From the sequence record ON190025.1: DNA of 64,000 nt. One strand, given 5' to 3'. The stretch's first letter is position 1. Each line of letters begins with the position of its first letter. Positions 909 through 60,100 of the stretch are shown here, piece by piece. A program made the translations under genes and the position numbers. The notes beneath the pieces are model-generated. The model did no database searches. It was not told the origin of the DNA and saw only the letters and a list, made by a program, of their open reading frames with translations.

Positions 909-2453
909 ATGAACCTAACTGAAAAATGGAAAGAATTGCTTGAAGCAGACGGTGCGGAAATGCCAGAGATTGCGACTGCAACTAAGCAAAAAATCATGTC
1001 GAAAATCTTTGAAAACCAAGATCGCGACATCAACAACGATCCAATGTACCGTGACCCACAGTTAATCGAAGCATTCAATGCTGGTCTAAACGAAGCTGTA
1101 GTTAACGGTGACCATGGTTACGATCCGTCTAACATCGCTCAAGGTGTTACTACTGGTGCAGTAACAAACATCGGTCCGACTGTAATGGGTATGGTTCGTC
1201 GTGCTATTCCTCAGCTTATCGCATTCGATATCGCTGGTGTTCAGCCAATGACTGGCCCAACTAGCCAAGTATTCACACTTCGCTCAGTATACGGTAAAGA
1301 CCCGCTAACTGGTAAAGAAGCTTTCCACCCGACTCGTCAAGCTGACGCTTCGTTCTCTGGTCAAGCTGCTGCATCAACAATTGCAGATTTCCCAACTACT
1401 GGTGCTGCAACTGACGGTACTCCGTACAAAGCTGAAGTAACTACTTCTGGTGGCGACGTTGACACTCGTTACTTCCTAGCACTTGGCGCTGTTACTCTAG
1501 CAGTTGCAGGTGAAATGACTGCTACAGAATACACTGACGCAGTTGCAGGTGGTCTTCTAGTTGAGATCGACGCTGGTATGGCAACATCTCAGGCTGAACT
1601 ACAAGAGAACTTCAACGGTTCAAGCAACAACGAGTGGAACGAGATGTCATTCCGCATCGACAAACAAGTTGTTGAAGCGAAATCACGTCAATTGAAAGCT
1701 CAATACTCAATCGAGCTTGCACAAGATCTACGTGCTGTACACGGTCTAGACGCTGACGCTGAACTTAGCGGTATTCTTGCTAACGAAGTTATGGTTGAGC
1801 TTAACCGCGAAATCGTTAACCTAGTTAACTCTCAAGCGCAAATCGGTAAGTCTGGTTGGACTCAAGGTCAAGGCGCAGCGGGTGTATTCGACTTCGCAGA
1901 CGCTGTAGACGTTAAAGGTGCTCGTTGGGCTGGTGAAGCTTACAAAGCTCTACTAATTCAAATTGAGAAAGAAGCGAACGAAATCGGTCGTCAAACTGGT
2001 CGTGGTAACGGTAACTTCATCATTGCATCACGCAACGTAGTTTCTGCACTATCAATGACTGATACTCTTGTTGGCCCTGCTGCACAAGGTATGCAAGACG
2101 GTTCAATGAACACTGACACAAACCAAACTGTGTTCGCGGGTGTTCTAGGTGGTCGCTTCAAAGTGTTCATCGACCAATACGCAGTGAACGATTACTTCAC
2201 AGTTGGTTTCAAAGGTTCTACTGAAATGGACGCAGGTGTGTTCTACTCACCATACGTACCGCTGACTCCACTACGTGGTTCAGACAGCAAGAACTTCCAA
2301 CCTGTAATTGGTTTCAAAACTCGTTACGGTATTCAAGTTAACCCATTCGCAGATCCTACTAAGGCTGCTGAAAAAGTTGGTAACGGCGCGCCTGTTGCTG
2401 CTTCAATGGGTAAGAACGCGTACTTCCGCAGAGTATTTGTCCGTGGCCTTTAA
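909..2453 (+). CDS. 23: Major capsid protein gp23
   Basis: LNE|AVVNGDHGY processing site, GVQPMTGPT, KSRQLKAQYSIELAQDL and YVPL motifs; 514 aa. Confidence 0.99.
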   Translation: MNLTEKWKELLEADGAEMPEIATATKQKIMSKIFENQDRDINNDPMYRDPQLIEAFNAGLNEAVVNGDHGYDPSNIAQGVTTGAVTNIGPTVMGMVRRAIPQLIAFDIAGVQPMTGPTSQVFTLRSVYGKDPLTGKEAFHPTRQADASFSGQAAASTIADFPTTGAATDGTPYKAEVTTSGGDVDTRYFLALGAVTLAVAGEMTATEYTDAVAGGLLVEIDAGMATSQAELQENFNGSSNNEWNEMSFRIDKQVVEAKSRQLKAQYSIELAQDLRAVHGLDADAELSGILANEVMVELNREIVNLVNSQAQIGKSGWTQGQGAAGVFDFADAVDVKGARWAGEAYKALLIQIEKEANEIGRQTGRGNGNFIIASRNVVSALSMTDTLVGPAAQGMQDGSMNTDTNQTVFAGVLGGRFKVFIDQYAVNDYFTVGFKGSTEMDAGVFYSPYVPLTPLRGSDSKNFQPVIGFKTRYGIQVNPFADPTKAAEKVGNGAPVAASMGKNAYFRRVFVRGL

Positions 2454-2500: not shown

Positions 2501-3598
2501 TTATAGACTATGCAAATATTTGTAGGCTATATTAACACGTTCATCTGTTAGAGCTTCGCCGTATGCAGGACCTGGTTCAACGTCAACTTTGACATTTCGA
2601 GTCAAGTCGATTATTTCAGTGATTACAATTCGTTTAACTTCATCAGTAATCTGGGAAAGTGCAACTTGGAATGGTAGATGCCCTTTGTATGCGCCTATTT
2701 TCTCAAGAATTAAAATGATTGTTTCATCAAAAACACTTGCATATTCCATCTGCATTAGCATCTGAGATGCCTTTCTGAATTGCTTAGTTTCACCGAAGTA
2801 TGAACCGAAACGTTGGCGACGGTTTAACGCAGCCCATTTTGCCATCAACTGAACATCTTCACAGTGAAACGGCATTCGTCTGAAGTGTCGAAGAGATTGA
2901 AGCTCATGTACGGTTGGTCTCGGTGAGAACCCAACCTGACTTAGAAACACAAAGTACATGTGCGCGTCTTTCTCTGATAGTGCTTTTTGAGTCTCTAACC
3001 AAACACGTTCTTTCGGTAGATTCTCAAGCATACCGTCGTTGATCATTTTCTTGCATAGCTCAACTGTCTCTTCTGCGACTGTGAATCCCATGCTGTAGTA
3101 TCGAGCATAGAAACGAGCGACGCGCAGAACACGTAACGGGTCTTCGGCAAACGCTTCAGTTGTATGACGAAGAATCTTGTTCTTCAAGTCATCTAGACCG
3201 CCGTACGGGTCGATGACATCATCAGTCGAACCAAACATGAACAAACTATTTGGCGTCATGTCAGGTATAGCCATTGAGTTGATAGTCAGATCTCGTCGTG
3301 ATAAGTCATCTTCTAACGTGACACCTTCCGTTGTGAAAGTGAAGTCAGTAGTTTTACCGCCAGTGCTACGCTCTACACGAGCAAGCGCGACTTCATTGTT
3401 GTCTTTATCGAGCCAAACAGGGAAATCAGCGCCGATTGGTTCACCGTACATAGACATCATTTGTTCGTGTGTACAACCAGTGACGACGTAATCAATATCT
3501 TTCGGGAAGCTAGACCAACCATCTACGTGTTTCAGAATAGAGTCGCGTACTGCACCCCCGACAATGTATTTTTGCATCAAGTTCATTTTCGCTTTCAT
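2501..3598 (-). CDS. cca: CCA-adding tRNA nucleotidyltransferase
   Basis: YIVGGAVRD, KDIDYVV, DLSRRDLTINSMA and EDPLRVLRVARF class II motifs; GGAG RBS. Confidence 0.95.
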   Translation of the reverse strand: MKAKMNLMQKYIVGGAVRDSILKHVDGWSSFPKDIDYVVTGCTHEQMMSMYGEPIGADFPVWLDKDNNEVALARVERSTGGKTTDFTFTTEGVTLEDDLSRRDLTINSMAIPDMTPNSLFMFGSTDDVIDPYGGLDDLKNKILRHTTEAFAEDPLRVLRVARFYARYYSMGFTVAEETVELCKKMINDGMLENLPKERVWLETQKALSEKDAHMYFVFLSQVGFSPRPTVHELQSLRHFRRMPFHCEDVQLMAKWAALNRRQRFGSYFGETKQFRKASQMLMQMEYASVFDETIILILEKIGAYKGHLPFQVALSQITDEVKRIVITEIIDLTRNVKVDVEPGPAYGEALTDERVNIAYKYLHSL

Positions 3599-3655: not shown

Positions 3656-3663
3656 TCTAAATA
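3656..3663 (+). promoter_or_regulatory. Late promoter variant TCTAAATA
   Basis: 30 nt upstream of inh; the same variant recurs before other late genes. Confidence 0.65.
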
Positions 3664-3693: not shown

Positions 3694-4182
3694 ATGAGTC
3701 AATTGAAAAAACATGCAGAGTCGTTAACTAAAGAAAAACTAGACGAGTTTGCAAAAGAATATTACGGCATCGAACTTGACCGTCGTAAATCAAAAGGCGC
3801 AATGACTAAGAAGCTTGTAGAAGAAGCTGAAGGTAAAACGCCATTGAAACAACTACCATGGGAAGAACTTCTGGTAGAGACTAAAGAAGAAATCAAAGAA
3901 ATTTCTGAAGTGAAGCCTGAAGTCGTTGAGAAAGTAGAACTACCAAACGATGAATCTTTTGAACCAATGCCATTGCCATTCCGTCGTGGTCGTGAATTTT
4001 TCATGACTGCTTCTGATAGCGCGGTTAAATCTGCGAAAGCTATTATCGCAGGTGATGGTTCGCTTGATGATGTACTTGCATCAGATCTTCGCGTAGTTAA
4101 ATCAATCTTGCATTATGTCGAGAAAGACGGCAAGGTGCTAGTGCGTGAAACTCGCAACAGTCAATTCATCACAATTAAATAG
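3694..4182 (+). CDS. inh: Inhibitor of prohead protease (Inh)
   Basis: C-terminal ILHYVEKDGKVLVRETRNSQFITIK matches T4 Inh LIYYINRDGSVLIRETRNSSFVTLK. Confidence 0.88.
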   Translation: MSQLKKHAESLTKEKLDEFAKEYYGIELDRRKSKGAMTKKLVEEAEGKTPLKQLPWEELLVETKEEIKEISEVKPEVVEKVELPNDESFEPMPLPFRRGREFFMTASDSAVKSAKAIIAGDGSLDDVLASDLRVVKSILHYVEKDGKVLVRETRNSQFITIK

Positions 4183-5862: not shown

Positions 5863-5889
5863 AAAAAAAGCGCAAAAATGCGCTTTTTT
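5863..5889 (-). terminator. Intrinsic terminator
   Basis: A7-GCGCA-AAAA-TGCGC-T6 hairpin. Confidence 0.8.
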
Positions 5890-5953: not shown

Positions 5954-6874
5954 TTATTTTCTAATGAAATATGTTTTAGTCGAGGCTTTCCCTTCGACCG
6001 TTTTATATGTGTAATTCGGTAATGTATCAGCATATCGTTTTACTAAACGATTGTATAGTTTTATTCTCGAATCACTGTCGTTTTTTATATCTCGCTCTGC
6101 ACTGAAATAAATTGTTTCTGGCTCTCGCTCGTCTATAAATTCACGCATACCGCTCATTACTGTCGCAAACACACCATACATATTGCCTCGACCTGTTGCG
6201 CTGTAAGTATAATCACCCGAACTGTTCATACCTAAGAACACAAGTTCCCATGCATCGTTTTGTTCTTGATACTGCATTGCAATCGCGTATTCGTCCCCGT
6301 TTACCGTGAACGTACCACCCCAACTGTGAATTCTCTTCTCAACCCAGTGTATTTTAGATGGTCGGTCAAATGCCTCAGTCAAGTTAACTGAAGATAACCA
6401 TTCACGCCATGTCTTCTTATTACCGATCTTGGCAAATGGGATATCGTCATGATCTAGCCACTGAGCCGAGCGGTCATATGACTGAGAAGTATCAAACCCT
6501 CTATAATCATCACCAACCCACAACCATTTGTGATGCCATATTTGGTTTACTTGACGTGGTTTGGAAACAACACCGTCTCTATAAGTAATCATCATACCCG
6601 CGGCTGGTTCTTGTACAGTATCAAATTCAACTGAATCGTAGAAAGCAACTCCACCTTTCTTGTAGTCAATTCGTACTACATTCGGAGTAAATTGTGAGTT
6701 TGCAATTGATACTTGAGTACGAGCATCAGCAACCATTTGCTTGAACTCATCGGGAACATAGTTAATGTGAACATATAATGAACCGCCAATGTCTTTACCC
6801 ACGCCCCACTTGCTGCGTTTTACTGCACTACCTTTTCGAGTTTTCAATGTAGCGCGTTCAAAAATTATGCTCAT
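5954..6874 (-). CDS. Putative internal head protein: Dnd-associated methyltransferase N-domain-like plus Alt-N-like domain
   Basis: N-half VGKDIGGSLYVH...IWHHKWLWV...KIGNKKTW; internal LTE|AFDRP; C-half homologous to ORF 51973; lies in a late operon. Confidence 0.6.
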   Translation of the reverse strand: MSIIFERATLKTRKGSAVKRSKWGVGKDIGGSLYVHINYVPDEFKQMVADARTQVSIANSQFTPNVVRIDYKKGGVAFYDSVEFDTVQEPAAGMMITYRDGVVSKPRQVNQIWHHKWLWVGDDYRGFDTSQSYDRSAQWLDHDDIPFAKIGNKKTWREWLSSVNLTEAFDRPSKIHWVEKRIHSWGGTFTVNGDEYAIAMQYQEQNDAWELVFLGMNSSGDYTYSATGRGNMYGVFATVMSGMREFIDEREPETIYFSAERDIKNDSDSRIKLYNRLVKRYADTLPNYTYKTVEGKASTKTYFIRK

Positions 6875-6876
6875 TA

Positions 6877-7470
6877 TTACCTCGTTGCTGCGTTTGTAAT
6901 ATTGCGAATCATACGAATTGCGTATTCAGTATCGCCAGTCATAGCCGATGACGCTGCTTTATCGACGTAAAATGTGCTATCTTCAATCATGTTCAAGTGA
7001 TGGTAAATCTCACGAAAATCATGACGGTCGTATTCTTTCACATTAAAACGAAACGCACCTGCCTGCTTATCTTCGTCATGAACACGCTTGTATTCATCTA
7101 CGACACGAATCATTTCGGTTGCGTATTTCTTCATTTCCATGTTATCAAGCTTTAAACGCTTTGCAGCTTTCATTACTTCGTCACGAGGACGTTCAAGCTC
7201 GATTACGTCTTTAAGAACATTCAGACTGTGAATTGTGTTCACTGCTGCACGCTCCATTCTTAGCTTATGATCTTCTAGTGACTTATTGTGCTTTCTAAGT
7301 TCACCCGATGCTGTCGCACTCGCGATCAAACCTGCAAACACACCCCAGAAGCCACCTTTGCGCTGCATACGCTTTTTAACTTCACCTTTCGAACCCGATG
7401 TTGCTGCTTTAAATTGAGCCCATCTACCGGTTTGTTTAGCTTTGTCCATTTCTGTTAAAAATTCTATCAT
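6877..7470 (-). CDS. Putative internal head protein (helical, Gly-rich hydrophobic segment)
   Basis: N-terminus MIEFLTE resembles a capsid-targeting sequence; first gene after late promoter 7493-7500. Confidence 0.55.
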   Translation of the reverse strand: MIEFLTEMDKAKQTGRWAQFKAATSGSKGEVKKRMQRKGGFWGVFAGLIASATASGELRKHNKSLEDHKLRMERAAVNTIHSLNVLKDVIELERPRDEVMKAAKRLKLDNMEMKKYATEMIRVVDEYKRVHDEDKQAGAFRFNVKEYDRHDFREIYHHLNMIEDSTFYVDKAASSAMTGDTEYAIRMIRNITNAATR

Positions 7471-7492: not shown

Positions 7493-7500
7493 TATTTAGA
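7493..7500 (-). promoter_or_regulatory. Late promoter variant TCTAAATA
   Basis: TATTTAGA on the plus strand, just downstream of terminator 7509-7536 in the direction of transcription. Confidence 0.7.
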
Positions 7501-7508
7501 CGCAAACG

Positions 7509-7536
7509 AAAAAAGGGTGACTTCGGTCACCCTTTT
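7509..7536 (-). terminator. Intrinsic terminator (UUCG-type loop)
   Basis: AAAAAGGGTGAC-TTCG-GTCACCCTTTT. Confidence 0.9.
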
Positions 7537-8523: not shown

Positions 8524-9012
8524 CTACTTTCTTCGCCATCTCTCAAGTTTTTCATCATATTCGCTATGCTTCCATAAGTCGAATACGATTGTACCTCTCT
8601 GAAACCACCAGACCAATGAAATAGTATCATTTAACTTAGGGTCTTTTGGGTTTTTCCCTGAATAAAATTCACTACTAGGGTGTGAGTGATAAATCGACTT
8701 TTTAACTGCGAACTTATACCCACCTTCAGGTTTACCGACTTCTTCTGGCGGGTATAAGTTACCTAGATACGCAACTTGATATACAGTGTTCTTGAATACG
8801 ATTCGACTTGAATCAATATTGAAGAGCAAGTTCTGATATTGAGCAGCATTCGCAGCAATCTTCCACGGGTGCTTCGGTTTCGTTTCTAGTAACTCATCGA
8901 TTTTCGGCTCAGGGATTAGTTTGGCTAGGTTATGATTACCCCACCCCTCTTCAAGTGATAAACTCAGTTCGATACCGTAAAGCGTGTTTTCATATTCATT
9001 AAATCGTAACAT
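8524..9012 (-). CDS. Putative internal head protein with HigB/RelE-like C-terminus
   Basis: MLRFNEY...LSLEE N-terminus; C-terminal YHSH...ISLVWWFQRGTIVFDLWKHSEYD. Confidence 0.45.
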   Translation of the reverse strand: MLRFNEYENTLYGIELSLSLEEGWGNHNLAKLIPEPKIDELLETKPKHPWKIAANAAQYQNLLFNIDSSRIVFKNTVYQVAYLGNLYPPEEVGKPEGGYKFAVKKSIYHSHPSSEFYSGKNPKDPKLNDTISLVWWFQRGTIVFDLWKHSEYDEKLERWRRK

Positions 9013-9015
9013 AAA

Positions 9016-9528
9016 TTACCTCAGATAAATGAAGCTGTTCGAAAGACGGTCGTGAACTAAAAGATGACCATTTCGCTTAACCCAATATTCAATCGTCTTC
9101 AATTCGTGAGAGTCGCGTCGACCTATATTCCAATCATGAATCACATCATGCGCAACTGGCTGATATAGCTCATCACCACGGCGATAAGTAGGCATCCATT
9201 TAGGCTTGAATTCGTCCTTGATTACTAATGTTACGTTTTCATCACCTAAAGGGGCATTAGCAGAAACACCTTCTAATTCTTTCTTAACGTCGTCTGAAAG
9301 CTCTTTGACTACAATCGCGTCCGATTCATCGACTGATTCACAGCGCGTCTCAGACTCGATTACAGAGCATTCTAGTGGTAGTTCTTTAACCTCGCGTAGC
9401 TCGTGTGTGAATAACTCGTCGATCATCTTGCTTTTAGTCAGAGATTTATCAAGTTCGATGTCGTAGTACTCTTTTGCAAATTCTGCAACTACGCGCTTGG
9501 TTTGTTTCTTTAGATATTCTTTAATCAT
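9016..9528 (-). CDS. Inh paralogue
   Basis: EFAKEYYDIELDKSLTKSKM closely matches EFAKEYYGIELDRRKSKGAM of inh (3694); C-terminal KTIEYWVKRNGHLLVHDRLSNSF. Confidence 0.8.
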   Translation of the reverse strand: MIKEYLKKQTKRVVAEFAKEYYDIELDKSLTKSKMIDELFTHELREVKELPLECSVIESETRCESVDESDAIVVKELSDDVKKELEGVSANAPLGDENVTLVIKDEFKPKWMPTYRRGDELYQPVAHDVIHDWNIGRRDSHELKTIEYWVKRNGHLLVHDRLSNSFIYLR

Positions 9529-51914: not shown

Positions 51915-51948
51915 AAAGGGGGCTTATGCCCCTTTTTGCGTATAAATA
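51915..51948 (+). promoter_or_regulatory. Terminator followed by late promoter TATAAATA
   Basis: Hairpin 51915-51937; TATAAATA at 51941-51948. Confidence 0.85.
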
Positions 51949-51972: not shown

Positions 51973-52854
51973 ATGATCATTTTTGAACATGGAGAAACGT
52001 TAATTGAAGCGTTCGACCGACCAGTGCCATATAGATGGGATGCTATGCACAATGAAGCTAGTTTCACAGTAGGCGGGACCCAATACCTAGCAACGATTCA
52101 AGATCGCGAAACGCCACGCGGTGTAAGCATATATGTAGCTTTCCAACGAAAAGATCGTGAAACAGGCAATTGGACGCACACGCTTGCAAAAGGATCGCCT
52201 AAAGATGCCATGACAGTATTAAGTACGATTCTAGCTGCTACGTTTGAAAAAGCGTCTGAGATTAACCCTGATGAGATTGCGTTTAGTGCGTACTCAGATG
52301 AAGATCGCAATGATGCAGACAAACGTTTCCGACTGTACAAACGTATGGCTGAGCGATACGCGAACAAGATGGACTATACGGTTCACGTCATGGGAAATAG
52401 CTTCACATTGAAGAACAATAACCCACCGAAAGTTCGCAGACTGCATAACGACGGGATTCACAAAGAAGAAGAACTAACGTACGTTATTTTCCCAAATACT
52501 AACGCATTCACTTGGGCTAAGTTATTCTGGTTAGACAACGACGGAGATTTCATTCGATTTGGATTGCCACACGGTCGAGTTTACATAGAGCGAAAATCGA
52601 GTGATGTTATTCACATTGAAGCAACAACTCCGCGTGGTAAGTTCAATAACTTAGATTCGGCTGACATTTGGCTGTCAATGCTAGGTGATATTACAGTTCG
52701 CACTAAAACAGGTCGTACATTTGATATTAGTGAAAAAGGTGCGGCGCTTGATGCAGGTGATATGATTTTATGTGAGCAAGATACATTGTATTACGTCGAA
52801 TCAGAAGAAGATTTTAGTAATATCTGGGGTTATGAACTAGAAGATATTCGATAA
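51973..52854 (+). CDS. Putative internal head protein with Alt-N-like domain
   Basis: LIE|AFDRP...FTVGG...IAFSA...RFRLYKRMAERYA, homologous to the C-half of ORF 5954. Confidence 0.65.
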   Translation: MIIFEHGETLIEAFDRPVPYRWDAMHNEASFTVGGTQYLATIQDRETPRGVSIYVAFQRKDRETGNWTHTLAKGSPKDAMTVLSTILAATFEKASEINPDEIAFSAYSDEDRNDADKRFRLYKRMAERYANKMDYTVHVMGNSFTLKNNNPPKVRRLHNDGIHKEEELTYVIFPNTNAFTWAKLFWLDNDGDFIRFGLPHGRVYIERKSSDVIHIEATTPRGKFNNLDSADIWLSMLGDITVRTKTGRTFDISEKGAALDAGDMILCEQDTLYYVESEEDFSNIWGYELEDIR

Positions 52855-52886: not shown

Positions 52887-54515
52887 TCATGGTGTTAGAG
52901 GACTACGCTCTTTTGTTAGTCTATCTGCATCGACATCTACATCAACAGAACGCATGAAATTAGCTACTTCTGAAAGCTCGTGTAAACGGTCTTGCTTTTT
53001 GAAAGCAGACAATACACCTTGCTTCGTATCTTCTTTGATTTTCAATCGAATTACAGCGTCGTATTCAGACATTTGAACAACGTCAGCTTCAAACATCGTA
53101 TTACGGTTGATGATAATCTCTTTTGAGTCTTTCATACCGTGTTTACCTGAAGCTAAAACAGGCAAGCCGCTCGCTTCTATGATGAATACAACATTCATTT
53201 TCTTATCTGACTCAAGCAGAGAACGCATATCTGATTTACTATTCTTAGCAGTTGAATCAATGATGTTCTTAGAGCTTGATTCAACGAACTTACAAGCAAC
53301 AAGAGGGTCGATTGACGTTGAGATAAACGCAGTCGAAACAAACGAGCCAGATTCAAGAATAGAGCGCACATGTTTACTTGACATTTCACAGCCACGATAT
53401 AACGTCATTCCACCAGCAATCATACCAGCTTCAGAAAACGCTTGGTCGATGCGTGAGACAATCTGTGATTCTTTATCAACACCAGTTCCGTGTAATAACT
53501 CTTCATTCACCTTCCATGAAAAACGAGTCGCGGAGTATCTAGCAATAGCCGCTTGTGTAAGTGACGATAGACCCGCAAATGAATCTTCCTGCATAAGTTG
53601 CAAAGAAAGACGTTCATACTGACTTGCATGAGCACGTGAGCGAGATTCCATGATACTATTCAGAACGCTTTGAGGCTTCTTCGATTCGGCGATATATGAA
53701 TTCAATGAAACTGCCACAGTTTCAAGATTCAAACTCATATCAATTAAACCTTTCGCAGCATTAGCAAGAACATGTTCATTGCTTTCATTCAATTGAGAAC
53801 GAACAGACGAACTTACACGCGCTTCATATTGAGGCATTTGAAGAACATCATTTGGAACACGTGCAGCGGGGTTTTCTTCTACCCATTTACCTAGTACGTC
53901 ATCTTCATAGTCGTCATACGCAGCATCGGCAGTTACGATAATCGTTTTCTTGCTTGAAATATCAGTTTCGAGTGACATTTTTAACGCAATATCGTTAATT
54001 GTTTCTTCAGATGCTTCGAATAGCTTATCGGCATTATACCCTGGTTTGGTTACAATAAAGAAGCTGTAATCTTGCGAAATTTCTTCACCACCCACGCCAA
54101 TAATCTTAGTTGTATCACAGCCGTAACGTAGCTTTTTAAACAACGTTTTAACGCGCAAGTCGAACATCTTACCCGTACCTAGTTTCTGCACACGCATTGA
54201 AACGACATTCGCACGACGTTTGATCATGAAATCTTGAACCACTTTAACAATAGTTTGTTGAAGCTTTTGTTCATCTCCCATTTCACGAATAGTAACACCG
54301 CCTTTTTTGCCGCGCATTGCTGATACAGTACAGAACCAAGAACGTTTACCGCGATTTCCGATATCTGATTTTGTTTTAGTTGTGAACGAAACAACGATGT
54401 CTCTGGCTTCGCCTTTCATGTCGATCACAAAGAATTTGTTTTCTTTGGTCGAGCGAGCCGGATAATAGTCGTACGTTGCGCTCATGTTTTCATTTAATTG
54501 TTGAAATCCAATCAT
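52887..54515 (-). CDS. alt: Alt-like ADP-ribosyltransferase
   Basis: MIGFQQLNE N-terminus; ART motifs LYRG, FISTS and SKEII; late promoter upstream. Confidence 0.78.
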   Translation of the reverse strand: MIGFQQLNENMSATYDYYPARSTKENKFFVIDMKGEARDIVVSFTTKTKSDIGNRGKRSWFCTVSAMRGKKGGVTIREMGDEQKLQQTIVKVVQDFMIKRRANVVSMRVQKLGTGKMFDLRVKTLFKKLRYGCDTTKIIGVGGEEISQDYSFFIVTKPGYNADKLFEASEETINDIALKMSLETDISSKKTIIVTADAAYDDYEDDVLGKWVEENPAARVPNDVLQMPQYEARVSSSVRSQLNESNEHVLANAAKGLIDMSLNLETVAVSLNSYIAESKKPQSVLNSIMESRSRAHASQYERLSLQLMQEDSFAGLSSLTQAAIARYSATRFSWKVNEELLHGTGVDKESQIVSRIDQAFSEAGMIAGGMTLYRGCEMSSKHVRSILESGSFVSTAFISTSIDPLVACKFVESSSKNIIDSTAKNSKSDMRSLLESDKKMNVVFIIEASGLPVLASGKHGMKDSKEIIINRNTMFEADVVQMSEYDAVIRLKIKEDTKQGVLSAFKKQDRLHELSEVANFMRSVDVDVDADRLTKERSPLTP

Positions 54516-57999: not shown

Positions 58000-59445
58000 A
58001 TGTTAGGTAACTTTGACTCATTTCTGAGTGAAAATCGCCGTCAAACTCAGGGTGGTAAAATCTACCCTAAGTTTGGTCAAGTTATTGTTGAGCTAGGCAC
58101 TGCATCTACTGAGTTCAGCAAAGGCAAAGGCGTTGAAACAACTATCGGCATGATGGAAAAGGCAAATGAGCTTAAATCTATCATGAGTACTAAACTTGCT
58201 GAAGATAAAAACGTCGATGAGAAAAACTTCGATATTAATCTGAGCGAGAACGTAAGCACAATCAACTTGCTTATGGAAAACGAATTCTTATCATTGCCAG
58301 CACATGAGCTACAGCAAGTTAAGTCTATGATCATGTGTACTGAAGCTCGTCTTCCTAGCATCGTGATTAAAGGCGGTTACTTAGATCAGGTTGTTGCCGA
58401 AGCGACTAAGCTTGGTTATAAGAAAAATGACATTCACGTTGTTTTCCCTATGCGTGAAATGAAAATTAATCTTGCTGATTCTGATAAGCTTGTAATTGAA
58501 TCGCTATCAATTGATGACAATTCAGCATCTGAAATACTGTCAATGGCTGAAAACATCGAGCTTGGTGACGTTTATGTGACTGTTGAATCGGTTGATTCAA
58601 AAGCCGAACTGTCTGACATCACTGAGATGAAAATCAAGTCTGGTAAAAATGCACTTACATTGGCTGCACTGAACCGTAAAATCATGGACTTGTTCATTGT
58701 AAAAGAAGCGAAAGACGTATCATACGCTCGTGAACGTAAAGACGATACTGGCTTGCCGATGCTAGAAGGATTCAAAGCATACGATCTGAAACAGAACATC
58801 ACCATGATTGAACATGCTCAGAACGTTTTCACGAAAGAAATCGCGACTGCGCCACTGACATCGACTGCATGGCAAAATCTTGTTGATGTGAAAGAAGCGT
58901 ATTTTGACAACGGTTGGAAGCTGAAACACAACAACACAAGTATTGTTCTAACAAACGCGGAACATGCTATGCGTGCAGGTCGTGTGTGTGAAGAATATCG
59001 CGTTGAATTATCTGAAGCAGGTTACCCGCTTCTTGATATGATTGCGATGATGGAACGTAAAGGCGTGAAACGTTTTGACTGTAAAGCATTTGCTGAAGCT
59101 ATGCTATCGTTCGATGGTTGTGTTACCCCTGAGCGTCAAACAGTGACTGCATTTTCAACAATGGCTGAGTCGAATCGTGTATTCCACCCGAATATCATGT
59201 CTAGTCTACGTCCAGTGACTGAAATGGTTGATGATGTTGATTCACTGATTCGTGCTCTTGCAAATGATCAGTTCAGTTCATTCAAGGTTGGTCAATCTTT
59301 CTCTGAAGCGATGCTTGATCAAGAAACACTTTACTCGATGATGGAAAACATCGTTGAAAACGGCGTTGACGTTTCGGTTGACGGTACTTTGATTGAGTTC
59401 AGCGTTAACGCAACGAACTATCTGATTGATATTGATATTAAGTAG
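58000..59445 (+). CDS. Putative internal head protein with degenerate P-loop kinase-like N-domain
   Basis: MLGNFDSFLSE; GGKIYPKFGQV, LPSIVI and LGYKKNDIHVVF motifs; Walker A degenerate. Confidence 0.5.
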   Translation: MLGNFDSFLSENRRQTQGGKIYPKFGQVIVELGTASTEFSKGKGVETTIGMMEKANELKSIMSTKLAEDKNVDEKNFDINLSENVSTINLLMENEFLSLPAHELQQVKSMIMCTEARLPSIVIKGGYLDQVVAEATKLGYKKNDIHVVFPMREMKINLADSDKLVIESLSIDDNSASEILSMAENIELGDVYVTVESVDSKAELSDITEMKIKSGKNALTLAALNRKIMDLFIVKEAKDVSYARERKDDTGLPMLEGFKAYDLKQNITMIEHAQNVFTKEIATAPLTSTAWQNLVDVKEAYFDNGWKLKHNNTSIVLTNAEHAMRAGRVCEEYRVELSEAGYPLLDMIAMMERKGVKRFDCKAFAEAMLSFDGCVTPERQTVTAFSTMAESNRVFHPNIMSSLRPVTEMVDDVDSLIRALANDQFSSFKVGQSFSEAMLDQETLYSMMENIVENGVDVSVDGTLIEFSVNATNYLIDIDIK

Positions 59446-59452
59446 GTGCACA

Positions 59453-60100
59453 ATGAAGAAATTTGGTGAATTTTTAACTGAAGTACAAAAGTACAGTTCC
59501 GCAGCAACGTCGATACGTGGTAAAGAAGTAGCAGCACTGGTTAAACTATACAAGAAAGGTATGTTTACACCGGGTGGTACTGCTCTTGACTATGGTGCTG
59601 GTAAATACGGTCGTAACGCTGAATTTTTACGCTCTGAAGGCATCAAAACGTATGCATATGACAAATTCAATGGTACATCTGCTGATGGTTGGACTGATGT
59701 CAGTCTGACTATCCCAAATGGGGAATCATTCGATACGGCGTTTACTTCTTACGTACTGAACGTTGTACCTGAAGAAGTCGAAGCAGAGATTATTCGTGAT
59801 GTTGAGTCTCGTGCTCGTGGTAAAGTTTTCCATATCACTCGCGGTACTGACATTACTCAAACTGTGTTGAACGTGATCAGTGGTAAAAGCAAAAACGATA
59901 TCATGATGCAATTCATTGCTCAAGAATATCCAGATCTGTCTATGCAGATTGAAGCAGGTAATGCAACAAGAGACGTGGCTAAAGAAATTGCTACTCGCGG
60001 TGTAGTTACAGCGAAAGACAGCTTTCAACGTATTCCAGACCTTTCAAAGTACGGTTACAAGAAATCTGGTTCAGGTGCTTCGGTAGTTTGGACAAAATAA
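59453..60100 (+). CDS. Class I SAM-dependent methyltransferase with capsid-targeting N-terminus
   Basis: MKKFGEFLTE; LDYGAGKYG (motif I), AYD, FDTAFTSYVLNVV; AGGTG RBS. Confidence 0.88.
   Translation: MKKFGEFLTEVQKYSSAATSIRGKEVAALVKLYKKGMFTPGGTALDYGAGKYGRNAEFLRSEGIKTYAYDKFNGTSADGWTDVSLTIPNGESFDTAFTSYVLNVVPEEVEAEIIRDVESRARGKVFHITRGTDITQTVLNVISGKSKNDIMMQFIAQEYPDLSMQIEAGNATRDVAKEIATRGVVTAKDSFQRIPDLSKYGYKKSGSGASVVWTK

What the first reader, a model, noticed from the sequence alone, without database searches (positions are those of the whole stretch)
6395..6874. N-terminal domain of ORF 5954 resembles the non-catalytic domain of phosphorothioation-associated MTases
Seen motifs: VGKDIGGSLYVH, PNVVRID, FYDSVEFDTVQEP, QIWHHKWLWVGDDY, KIGNKKTWREWL. 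It is followed by VNLTE|AFD (E167 at 6374-6376), which fits the gp21 (I/L)xE cleavage rule. Inference: a two-domain polyprotein cleaved inside the head into two cargoes. The domain might recognise modified DNA.
Basis: partly seen in the sequence, partly recalled or inferred. Interest (0 to 1): 0.75.

Follow-up and report, generated by a model that had tools for sequence, protein, structure and literature searches.

The report
Virion-packaged two-module phage effector precursor
This gene of a KVP40-like Vibrio phage joins a widespread, unnamed domain (also found in dnd-associated methyltransferases and giant injected "polyvalent" proteins) to a GNAT-like domain. An orthologue is present in phage particles, and the joint between the two domains looks like a prohead-protease cutting site.

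Summary
ORF 5954-6874 (-) encodes 306 aa, every quoted motif is present, and E167 lies at 6374-6376. The window is a Schizotequatrovirus, 100% identical here to Vibrio phage PVA23; the gene is the KVP40.0371 orthologue.

The link to TIGR04096 holds at family level only. The window protein does not hit that model, but 31 of 49 stand-alone relatives do (best E 3.9e-10), on profile positions about 285-462 of 478. The domain has no Pfam model and no solved structural relative, yet it occurs in at least 1103 protein clusters. It occurs alone, next to SAM methyltransferases in either order, and inside 2000-6451 aa polyvalent proteins.

The two-domain split near aa 168 is real. The C-terminal domain is a swappable, GNAT-like module.

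Packaging has outside support: the 6E351A orthologue was detected in virions by mass spectrometry (PMC12028318).

Cleavage at LTE167|AFDRP is untested. It is backed by paralogues in which the same AFDRP follows a short N-terminal leader ending LxE, including window ORF 51973.

Recognition of modified DNA has no support.

Verdict: partly supported; a probable injected two-cargo precursor of unknown biochemistry.

The parts
5954..6874 (-). Whole ORF, 306 aa, 35.4 kDa; orthologue of KVP40.0371, phrog_16075
6857..6874 (-). N-terminal leader MSIIFE (aa 1-6), ending I-F-E; candidate capsid-targeting and processing leader. It lies outside the folded core.
   Evidence: Residues 1-5 have pLDDT <50. Leaderless homologues start at the position of about aa 8-10. 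The same MIIFE heads the paralogue at ORF 51973, where it precedes a different domain, and also KVP40.0058.
6374..6856 (-). N-domain, aa 7-167, 18.5 kDa, pI 9.25. Member of a large unnamed family that matches the C-terminal region of TIGR04096.
   Evidence: AF2 model pLDDT 85.5, pTM 0.80
6527..6535 (-). H114-H115-K116, the centre of the most conserved motif (IWHHKWLWV); candidate active or ligand site
   Evidence: H114 and H115 invariant, K116 at least 90% conserved, in 49 diverse members
6374..6382 (-). L165-T166-E167, the candidate prohead-protease site at the domain junction (LTE|AFDRP)
   Evidence: E167 is invariant in fused orthologues. The junction aligns with the leader/mature junction of paralogues. 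Mean pLDDT for residues 161-170 is 62.
5957..6373 (-). C-domain, aa 168-306, 16.2 kDa. DUF6934-like with a GNAT-like predicted fold; a swappable module.
6877..7470 (-). Upstream, probably co-transcribed gene (197 aa, phrog_16422) with leader MIEFLTE. Its orthologue is found in virions.
7493..7500 (-). TCTAAATA, a one-mismatch T4-type late-promoter-like box 22 nt upstream of the ATG at 7470
   Evidence: The same variant lies upstream of inh, at 3656. Weak evidence.
7511..7536 (-). Terminator-like hairpin upstream of the two-gene unit
5864..5889 (-). Terminator-like hairpin just after the ORF's stop codon
51973..52854 (+). Paralogue of the C-domain (293 aa, PHROG 6387 type). It begins MIIFEHGETLIE|AFDRP, and an exact TATAAATA lies at 51941-51948.
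   Evidence: orthologue VP6E351A_0094 found in virions
52887..54515 (-). [quoted passage not shown] Serves as an internal control for a head-packaged protein; leader MIGFQQLNE.
59453..60100 (+). 215 aa protein with a near-canonical T4-type leader, MKKFGEFLTE. Its orthologue VP6E351A_0103 is found in virions.

Best explanation
The gene encodes a late-made protein that is packaged in the phage head and carries two unrelated effector modules. Shown: there are two independently folding domains with a boundary near aa 168. Shown: the N-domain belongs to a very large, unnamed family. Members occur alone, next to SAM methyltransferases (the TIGR04096 architecture among them), and inside giant polyvalent proteins of the kind predicted to be injected with DNA. 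Shown in the literature: an orthologue is present in virions. Inferred: the short leader MSIIFE and the junction NLTE167|A168 are cut by the phage's gp21-type prohead protease. That would release an 18.5 kDa basic N-module and a 16.2 kDa GNAT-like C-module, which travel into the host with the DNA and act at the very start of infection in counter-defence or host take-over. Inferred, with low confidence: the N-module is a nucleic-acid-directed binding or catalytic unit built around R20, K27, H36, E89 and H114-H115-K116, and it normally works beside a methyltransferase.
For: Domain boundary. The KVP40 nucleotide match stops at 6365. Stand-alone 168-180 aa forms exist. In phage 1.081.O the syntenic gene ends right after NLSESH. 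The KVP40 C-domain is only 31% identical.

Family breadth. 1103 cluster representatives match. Fusion partners are Methyltransf_23 in both orders, ART-PolyVal, LPD38, RadC, NlpC/P60, GNAT and CCA-adding enzyme.

TIGR04096 link..

Virion presence. VP6E351A_0018 (PHROG 16075) gave 9 and 14 spectral counts. Leader-bearing neighbours 0019 and 0022, the paralogue 0094, Alt 0095 and 0103 were also detected. Leaderless neighbours 0017 and 0020 were not (PMC12028318 Tables S4 and S8).

Leaders. 44 of the 64 homologues that have an N-terminal extension carry hydrophobic-x-E within 4 aa of the core start. Homologues sit in arrays of genes sharing one leader: L063, a T4-like contig, has MLSFKQF(I/L)xE; L062 has about 18 genes starting MSKAKELIxLxE.

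Junction. Window ORF 51973 reads MIIFEHGETLIE|AFDRP, KVP40.0058 reads ...PLCE|AFDRP, 1.081.O gp130 reads ...ELNE|AFDR and P0023 reads ...SLTE|AFDAP, against the target's ...NLTE|AFDRP. gp23 has GLNE|A at the position that, from memory of the T4 gp23 site, I take to be its maturation cut. The phage encodes a prohead protease. The gp21 rule L/I-x-E, the 10-residue capsid-targeting sequence and the C-terminal processing of Alt are described in PMC9026906.
Against: No peptide-level data show any cleavage. The 6E351A particles were PEG-precipitated, and the list includes low-count replication enzymes, so contamination is possible. The leader is 6 aa, not the 10 aa of T4. (L/I)xE is common by chance. 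An LxE at the end of the N-domain is widespread in the family (45 of 83 against 26% background). It also occurs in stand-alone proteins with nothing to separate, so it may be structural. No exact late promoter precedes the operon. There is no fold or sequence match that assigns a biochemical activity to the N-domain.
Confidence: 0.55

Rival explanations
1. The protein is packaged in the head but stays whole. It would be a small two-domain polyvalent protein, with LTE167 serving only as the structural end of the N-domain's last helix and AFDRP as the first structural element of the C-domain.
For: G/P-[LI]-x-E closes the N-domain in many homologues regardless of what follows, and in stand-alone proteins too. 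Over 75% of polyvalent proteins are 2-3 domain proteins (PMC5512222). The proteome table gives no fragment information; the listed 37 kDa is presumably the size calculated from the sequence.
Against: In paralogues the LxE lies in a short N-terminal extension, with variable x and variable preceding residues but fixed L, E and AFDR. That is the pattern expected of a processing site. Giant non-T4-type proteins have GLPxD rather than GLxE at this spot. Linker variants carry extra F/I-x-E repeats (P0004, P0007).
Confidence: 0.25
2. The protein is not a virion component. It would be a cytoplasmic counter-defence or auxiliary protein, with the mass-spectrometry signal being carry-over from lysate.
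For: The particles were PEG-precipitated only. SSB, dUTPase, thymidylate synthase and ligase also appear in the list. Counts are modest, at 9 and 14. Only a one-mismatch late-promoter box is present.
Against: The counts equal or exceed those of the scaffold and approach those of the prohead protease. Adjacent leaderless genes 0017 and 0020 are absent, while leader-bearing neighbours are present. The C-domain homologue in PA5oct is independently annotated as a structural protein by ESI-MS/MS. The gene sits between inh and a second inh-like gene, beside the head genes.
Confidence: 0.12
3. One reading: the N-domain is a non-catalytic reader of phosphorothioate-modified, or otherwise modified, DNA.
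For: There is family-level homology to the C-terminal region of TIGR04096, a family named for its neighbourhood to dnd genes. The domain is basic, with pI 9.25. Planctomycete fusions also carry HNH_repeat DNA-binding repeats.
Against: No dnd context was seen in any locus examined. Fusion partners also include RNA-directed enzymes: CCA-adding enzyme twice, a Tpt1-like domain and NFACT-R. The invariant His-His-Lys and near-invariant Glu/His suggest catalysis or small-ligand binding rather than a passive reader. No PADLOC hit.
Confidence: 0.1

Closest known systems
T4 internal head proteins (IPI, IPII, IPIII, Alt), which have capsid-targeting sequences and are processed by gp21
   Same: The host phage is T4-related and has a prohead protease. 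The protein has a short N-terminal leader ending (L/I)xE. Its gene lies in a variable region next to the head genes. An orthologue is present in virions. Relatives in other phages lie in arrays of unrelated genes sharing one leader, as at the T-even IP locus (PMC3012670; PMC9026906).
   Different: The leader is 6 aa rather than 10. There is no sequence similarity to any T4 IP. Two modules sit in one precursor, with a second putative site between them. Processing and ejection have not been shown.
Polyvalent proteins of phages and conjugative elements (Iyer, Burroughs, Anand, de Souza and Aravind 2017, PMC5512222)
   Same: The N-domain occurs inside 2000-6451 aa proteins together with ART-PolyVal, LPD38, RadC-like JAB, NlpC/P60 and methyltransferase domains. 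The logic is the same: disparate effector domains in one polypeptide, predicted to be delivered with the DNA and to be proteolytically processed.
   Different: There are only two domains here. The N-domain matched no Pfam model, LPD models included, whether in the window protein at E<=1 or in the domain region of the relatives scanned at E<=0.1 or stricter. Processing would be by the prohead serine protease, not by a zincin metallopeptidase domain.
TIGR04096 (dnd_rel_methyl), DNA phosphorothioation-associated putative methyltransferase
   Same: The N-domain family is homologous to profile positions about 285-462 of 478, downstream of the methyltransferase part. The pairing of methyltransferase with this domain recurs in bacteria, phages and polyvalent proteins.
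   Different: The window protein has no methyltransferase domain, no direct hit to the model and no dnd neighbourhood. Even the best relatives score 48 bits or less against a 150-bit cut-off.
GNAT acetyltransferases and Pfam DUF6934 (for the C-domain)
   Same: All top Foldseek hits for the full-length model are GNATs (RimL, SpeG and others), aligned over about 133 columns. There is a weak DUF6934 match. Leader-bearing GNAT genes lie beside N-domain homologues in L062 and L063.
   Different: E-values are only 2e-3 to 6e-2 and the TM-score normalised to the target is about 0.4. No canonical acetyl-CoA-binding R/Q-x-x-G-x-G/A motif is visible by eye. DUF6934 scores 23.3 bits, below the 27-bit gathering threshold.

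Membership tests
TIGR04096 (dnd_rel_methyl) | Whole-protein score at or above the curated cut-off (150 bits) | tested here: not met
   No hit for the full protein at E<=1 or for the N-domain alone at E<=10. Relatives reach at most 48.3 bits.
TIGR04096 (dnd_rel_methyl) | SAM-dependent methyltransferase domain in the same polypeptide | tested here: not met
   Pfam finds only a weak DUF6934 match in the window protein. The methyltransferase is present in relatives.
TIGR04096 (dnd_rel_methyl) | Homology to the region C-terminal of the methyltransferase (profile positions about 285-462) | tested here: met
   Met at family level only. 31 of 49 stand-alone members hit, best E 3.9e-10, and no other family has more than one member. 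P0097, P0126 and P0093 map to positions 285-462.
TIGR04096 (dnd_rel_methyl) | Neighbourhood of dnd (phosphorothioation) genes | tested here: not met
   The neighbours are phage head genes, inh, uvsW and hypothetical genes. No PADLOC hit for the protein. The rest of the genome was not scanned.
T4-type internal head protein (gp21 substrate with capsid-targeting sequence) | N-terminal leader ending (L/I)xE, about 10 aa, with hydrophobic or aromatic residues at the targeting positions | tested here: inconclusive
   MSIIFE is only 6 aa. It is shared with paralogue ORF 51973 and with stand-alone N-domain proteins. Full-length T4-like leaders occur on homologues elsewhere.
T4-type internal head protein (gp21 substrate with capsid-targeting sequence) | Phage encodes a gp21-type prohead protease and scaffold core | tested here: met
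   PVA23_185 is annotated 'prohead core protein protease', PVA23_186 is the scaffold, and gp23 is at window 909-2453.
T4-type internal head protein (gp21 substrate with capsid-targeting sequence) | Present in mature virions | tested here: met
   Met for the orthologue only. VP6E351A_0018 was detected in two replicates (PMC12028318 Table S4). It has not been shown for this phage.
T4-type internal head protein (gp21 substrate with capsid-targeting sequence) | Cleaved after Glu by the prohead protease and ejected into the host | not testable with these tools
   Needs peptide-level mass spectrometry, N-terminal sequencing or an in vitro protease assay.
Polyvalent proteins (PMC5512222) | Two or more unrelated effector-type domains in one polypeptide, with domains shared with larger polyvalent proteins | tested here: met
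   There are two domains. The N-domain is found with ART-PolyVal, LPD38, RadC and NlpC/P60.
GNAT acetyltransferase (C-domain) | GNAT fold with an acetyl-CoA-binding motif | tested here: inconclusive
   Fold hits are consistent but weak. No Pfam GNAT hit. The motif was not seen by eye.

The most novel reading that the evidence does not exclude
T4-like and jumbo phages may build their injected arsenals from cargo cassettes. Each cassette would carry a leader ending LxE. Cassettes could be shuffled or fused in frame at that very motif, giving small polyproteins that the prohead protease resolves inside the capsid. This gene would be a caught-in-the-act example. Its N-module would be a new enzyme or ligand-binding domain (the H-H-K family) that partners with SAM methyltransferases in DNA-modification conflicts, including the dnd-linked TIGR04096 proteins.
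Probability: 0.25. Interest if true: 0.8.

Novelty: new variant of a known kind. Interest (0 to 1): 0.6.

Why it matters
First, it gives a handle on a very large domain family: at least 1103 clusters at 50% identity. No Pfam model, no solved structure and, in the literature searched here, no description was found for it. So far the family has been visible only as the unexplained tail of a dnd-associated methyltransferase model.

Second, it ties three settings together: bacterial methyltransferase fusions, giant polyvalent proteins, and leader-tagged head proteins of T4-like and jumbo phages. That points to a role at the moment of DNA entry.

Third, if the internal LTE|AFDRP junction is cut, it shows how capsid-targeted effectors can be fused and swapped at the protease motif. 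This would extend the T4 capsid-targeting concept, and the protein-packaging tools built on it, to two-cargo precursors.

Tried and rejected
Direct family assignment failed. Pfam, NCBIfam and PADLOC gave nothing for the N-domain. PDB searches by single sequence and by profile gave nothing.

Foldseek with a good N-domain model (pLDDT 85.5) found no PDB relative; the best hits were ABBA prenyltransferases at E 0.29 and TM 0.30, which I treat as noise. In BFVD it found only one homologous piece of a large viral protein of more than 1232 aa.

I considered an HKD (phospholipase-D-type) reading of H114-x-K116...D122. The spacing is off by one and no PLD fold was found, so I dropped it. I also considered a PD-(D/E)xK reading of D85/E89/K116 and dropped it for lack of any fold support.

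Searches with the C-domain among 78-248 aa and 168-535 aa candidates found almost nothing. Its relatives came only from tblastn against phage genomes.

I started a genome-wide test of leader presence against virion detection in 6E351A and abandoned it. The gene numbering of the available record (6E35-1b) drifts from that of the proteome table. The simple rule of (L/I)xE within 12 residues is also too unspecific, fitting roughly a fifth of the window's ORFs.

The exact late promoter TATAAATA is absent upstream of the operon. One-mismatch boxes are not enriched in the window: 64 found against 78 expected.

The plus-strand ORFs overlapping the gene (6260-6391 and 6409-6588) were taken as incidental without a test; they overlap a conserved coding gene on the other strand.

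Full report
WHAT IS THERE

The window is a Schizotequatrovirus, a KVP40-like T4-related Vibrio phage. The 921-base stretch is 100% identical to Vibrio phage PVA23 and 98.5-99.3% identical to ValKK3, phi-ST2, VH7D and other close relatives.

ORF 5954-6874 (-) encodes 306 aa. It is the orthologue of KVP40.0371 and belongs to phrog_16075, function unknown.

The gene lies in a minus-strand block of hypothetical genes between inh (prohead protease inhibitor) and uvsW. This block is just downstream of the head genes gp21, gp22 and gp23.

The gene abuts the upstream ORF 6877-7470, and the pair is bracketed by terminator-like hairpins at 7536-7511 and 5889-5864. A one-mismatch late-promoter-like box, TCTAAATA, sits 22 nt before the first ATG. 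The same variant precedes inh. This promoter evidence is weak.

TWO DOMAINS

The split near residue 168 is real.
- In KVP40 and its closest relatives only window 6365-6874 (aa 1-170) matches at the nucleotide level. Their C-terminal half is only 31% identical (E 2e-8).
- Many phage and metagenomic proteins of 168-180 aa consist of the N-domain alone.
- In Vibrio phage 1.081.O the gene at the same syntenic position stops right after ...NLSESH.
- AlphaFold models give pLDDT 85.5 and pTM 0.80 for the N-domain alone. The full-length model has pLDDT 82 and pTM 0.62, a disordered stretch at residues 1-5, and a dip to 62 at residues 161-170.

THE N-DOMAIN FAMILY

A profile of 14 members finds 1103 cluster representatives at E<=1e-3 among 1.84 billion proteins. 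The domain occurs in four settings:
- alone, at about 155-190 aa;
- at either end of 340-800 aa proteins;
- in the middle of 2000-6451 aa proteins;
- in bacterial genomes, mostly Planctomycetota MAGs, either alone or fused.

The window protein had no Pfam hit over the N-domain at E<=1. The relatives, scanned at E<=0.1 or stricter, had none over the domain region. No solved structure matches by sequence or by fold.

In 49 diverse stand-alone members G26, K27, P90, H114, H115, W117, Y124, F127 and S136 are invariant. R20, Y34, H36, Y39, F84, E89, K116, V120, W139 and G151 are at least 90% conserved.

The most frequent partner is a class-I SAM methyltransferase (Methyltransf_23), in both orders. 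In the giant protein P0148 it follows the domain directly. Other partners are ART-PolyVal, LPD38, RadC-like JAB, NlpC/P60, GNAT, CCA-adding enzyme (twice), a Tpt1/PARP-like region, NFACT-R and DUF5662. ART-PolyVal and LPD38 are Pfam's own polyvalent-protein families, and the other partners are enzyme types expected in such proteins. The class was described by Iyer et al. 2017 (PMC5512222) as effectors delivered with invading DNA.

THE TIGR04096 CLAIM

The window protein does not hit TIGR04096, either full-length at E<=1 or as the N-domain alone at E<=10. The family does.
- 31 of 49 stand-alone members match it (best E 3.9e-10), while every other family is matched by at most one member.
- Fused relatives align their copy of the domain to profile positions 285-462 of 478. 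P0100 aligns its upstream part (aa 195-311, before its N-domain copy) to positions 44-153.

All scores lie far below the 150-bit cut-off and the window protein has no methyltransferase domain, so it is not a member of TIGR04096.

PACKAGING

A published virion proteome of Schizotequatrovirus 6E351A lists the orthologue VP6E351A_0018. This is QZI87455, 325 aa, PHROG 16075, and the authors' category for it is 'Defense?'. It gave 9 and 14 counts in two replicates (PMC12028318 Tables S4 and S8).

Also detected:
- orthologue 0019 of window ORF 6877-7470;
- orthologue 0022 of ORF 8524-9012;
- orthologue 0094 of ORF 51973-52854 (the C-domain paralogue);
- Alt, 0095;
- orthologue 0103 of ORF 59453-60100.

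The leaderless neighbours 0017 and 0020 were not detected.

There are caveats. The particles were PEG-precipitated, and a few replication enzymes appear at low counts. A C-domain homologue in Pseudomonas phage PA5oct is independently annotated as a structural protein by ESI-MS/MS, and it starts MHLFE.

LEADERS

The folded core of the N-domain begins near residue 8. Leaderless homologues start there, with sequences like MKKLKTLKGS. Of 102 homologues with the domain at the N-terminus, 64 have an extension of 5 aa or more. In 44 of those a hydrophobic-x-E ends within 4 residues of the core.

Several extensions have the length and pattern of the T4 capsid-targeting sequence: MLSFKQFITE, MQNFKQYLTE, MPNFLEFLNE. 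In the T4 sequence, positions 4 and 7 govern targeting and positions 8 and 10 govern processing (PMC9026906).

Two homologues were placed in genomic context.
- In L063, a T4-like contig with gp2, gp19, gp53 and baseplate genes, five adjacent and otherwise unrelated genes begin MLSFKQF(I/L)xE or a close variant.
- In L062, a contig with an Rpb1-like RNA polymerase and PolA, about 18 consecutive genes begin MSKAKELIxLxE.

This is the architecture known from the T-even internal-protein locus (PMC3012670).

In the window the target starts MSIIFE and its upstream partner starts MIEFLTE. The Alt orthologue starts MIGFQQLNE, ORF 59453 starts MKKFGEFLTE and ORF 51973 starts MIIFE.

THE INTERNAL JUNCTION

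The target reads ...SSVNLTE167|AFDRPSKIHW. The C-domain has paralogues in every KVP40-like genome. In these paralogues the C-domain comes first, preceded only by a short leader:
- window ORF 51973: MIIFEHGETLIE|AFDRPVPYRW (tblastn E 2.5e-11 to the target, aligned from L165);
- KVP40.0058: MIIFEDINPLCE|AFDRPAPYKW;
- phage 1.081.O gp130: MKFSEYQELNE|AFDRAAP;
- phage 1.081.O gp128: ...QSLDE|AMDRAA;
- metagenomic P0023...QESLTE|AFDAP.

L, E and AFDR are fixed, while the middle residue and the upstream residues vary. The internal LTE|A of the target is therefore homologous to a leader/mature junction. The phage's own gp23 has GLNE|A at the position I take, from memory of the T4 gp23 site, to be the maturation cut. 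Linker variants in orthologues add further F/I-x-E units: NLSESSMFSESMD and NLSETSLIESLD.

There is a counter-argument. An LxE also closes the N-domain in many relatives, whatever follows: 45 of 83 against a 26% background. It also closes stand-alone proteins such as ...GLKESK and ...NLSESH. This could mean C-terminal trimming, as is known for T4 Alt, or it could simply be structure. Giant polyvalent proteins have GLPxD at this position instead.

THE C-DOMAIN

The C-domain has weak DUF6934 matches and matches to phrog_6387 and phrog_27801. The full-length model's top PDB hits are all GNAT acetyltransferases, aligned over about 133 columns. The E-values are only 2e-3 to 6e-2. I saw no acetyl-CoA motif. 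I call it GNAT-like with low confidence.

MOST LIKELY MECHANISM

The protein is made late and taken into the prohead core by its leader. The gp21-type protease then trims it at E6 and probably at E167. Two modules, of 18.5 and 16.2 kDa, stay in the head and enter the host with the DNA.

Status of each step:
- shown here: the domain architecture, the family relationships and the junction homology;
- shown in the literature, for an orthologue: presence in virions;
- inferred: targeting by the leader, both cleavages, and ejection;
- unknown: the biochemical activity.

My best guess for the N-module is a nucleic-acid-directed binding or catalytic unit that normally cooperates with a methyltransferase. 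Fusions to RNA-directed enzymes leave RNA as an equally open target.

NOVELTY

The kind is known: leader-tagged internal head proteins and polyvalent injected effectors. Three things are new.
- The domain family itself has no Pfam model, no solved structure and, in the literature searched here, no description.
- The family links TIGR04096, polyvalent proteins and T4-like head cargo.
- The gene appears to be a fusion of two cargo cassettes exactly at the protease motif.

Noticed in passing
window 59453-60100 (+): A 215 aa hypothetical protein starts MKKFGEFLTE, a near-canonical T4-type capsid-targeting leader. Its 6E351A orthologue (VP6E351A_0103) is fairly abundant in virions, at 31 and 79 counts. 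It is a good candidate for the main internal protein of KVP40-like phages.
   Followed up: partly
window 58000-59445 (+): A 481 aa protein starts MLGNFDSFLSE, which is leader-like. The 6E351A authors flagged its orthologue (0102) as 'Defense?', but it was not detected in particles.
   Followed up: partly
L062:111-8038: A metagenomic phage contig, carrying an Rpb1-like RNA polymerase and a PolA-UDG gene, has about 18 consecutive genes of unrelated sequence. All begin MSKAKELIxLxE or a close variant. The array includes an N-domain homologue and a GNAT. It looks like a very large array of leader-tagged cargo genes.
   Followed up: partly
window 2501-3598 (-): A tRNA nucleotidyltransferase (CCA-adding enzyme) gene sits between gp23 and inh. 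Elsewhere the N-domain is fused directly to CCA-adding enzymes (P0071, P0106). This may be coincidence or a functional link to tRNA repair.
   Followed up: no
window 9016-9528 (-) and 3694-4182 (+): Two inh-like (prohead protease inhibitor) genes flank the variable block that holds the target. Their N-terminal regions share ...EFAKEYY(G/D)IELD.
   Followed up: no
L004-L061 (genome-contig hits): By my count of the record titles, roughly 50 of the 59 bacterial or archaeal loci carrying the [WY]HHKW[LM][WF]V motif come from Planctomycetota MAGs or isolates (Pirellulaceae, Planctomycetaceae, Fuerstiella, Stieleria, Roseiconus). They are often fused to a methyltransferase and HNH_repeat units. The reason for this phylum bias is unknown.
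   Followed up: partly
window 909-2453 (+), gp23 aa 51-63: The gp23 propeptide contains QLIE|AFNAGLNE|A. The first site repeats the LIE|AF of the C-domain paralogue's leader junction.
   Followed up: no
L069:2333-2758 (Pseudomonas phage PA5oct EST35_0349): A stand-alone C-domain homologue of 141 aa starts MHLFELFDQIE. It is annotated as a structural protein by ESI-MS/MS, so the DUF6934-like module is a virion protein in an unrelated jumbo phage as well.
   Followed up: partly
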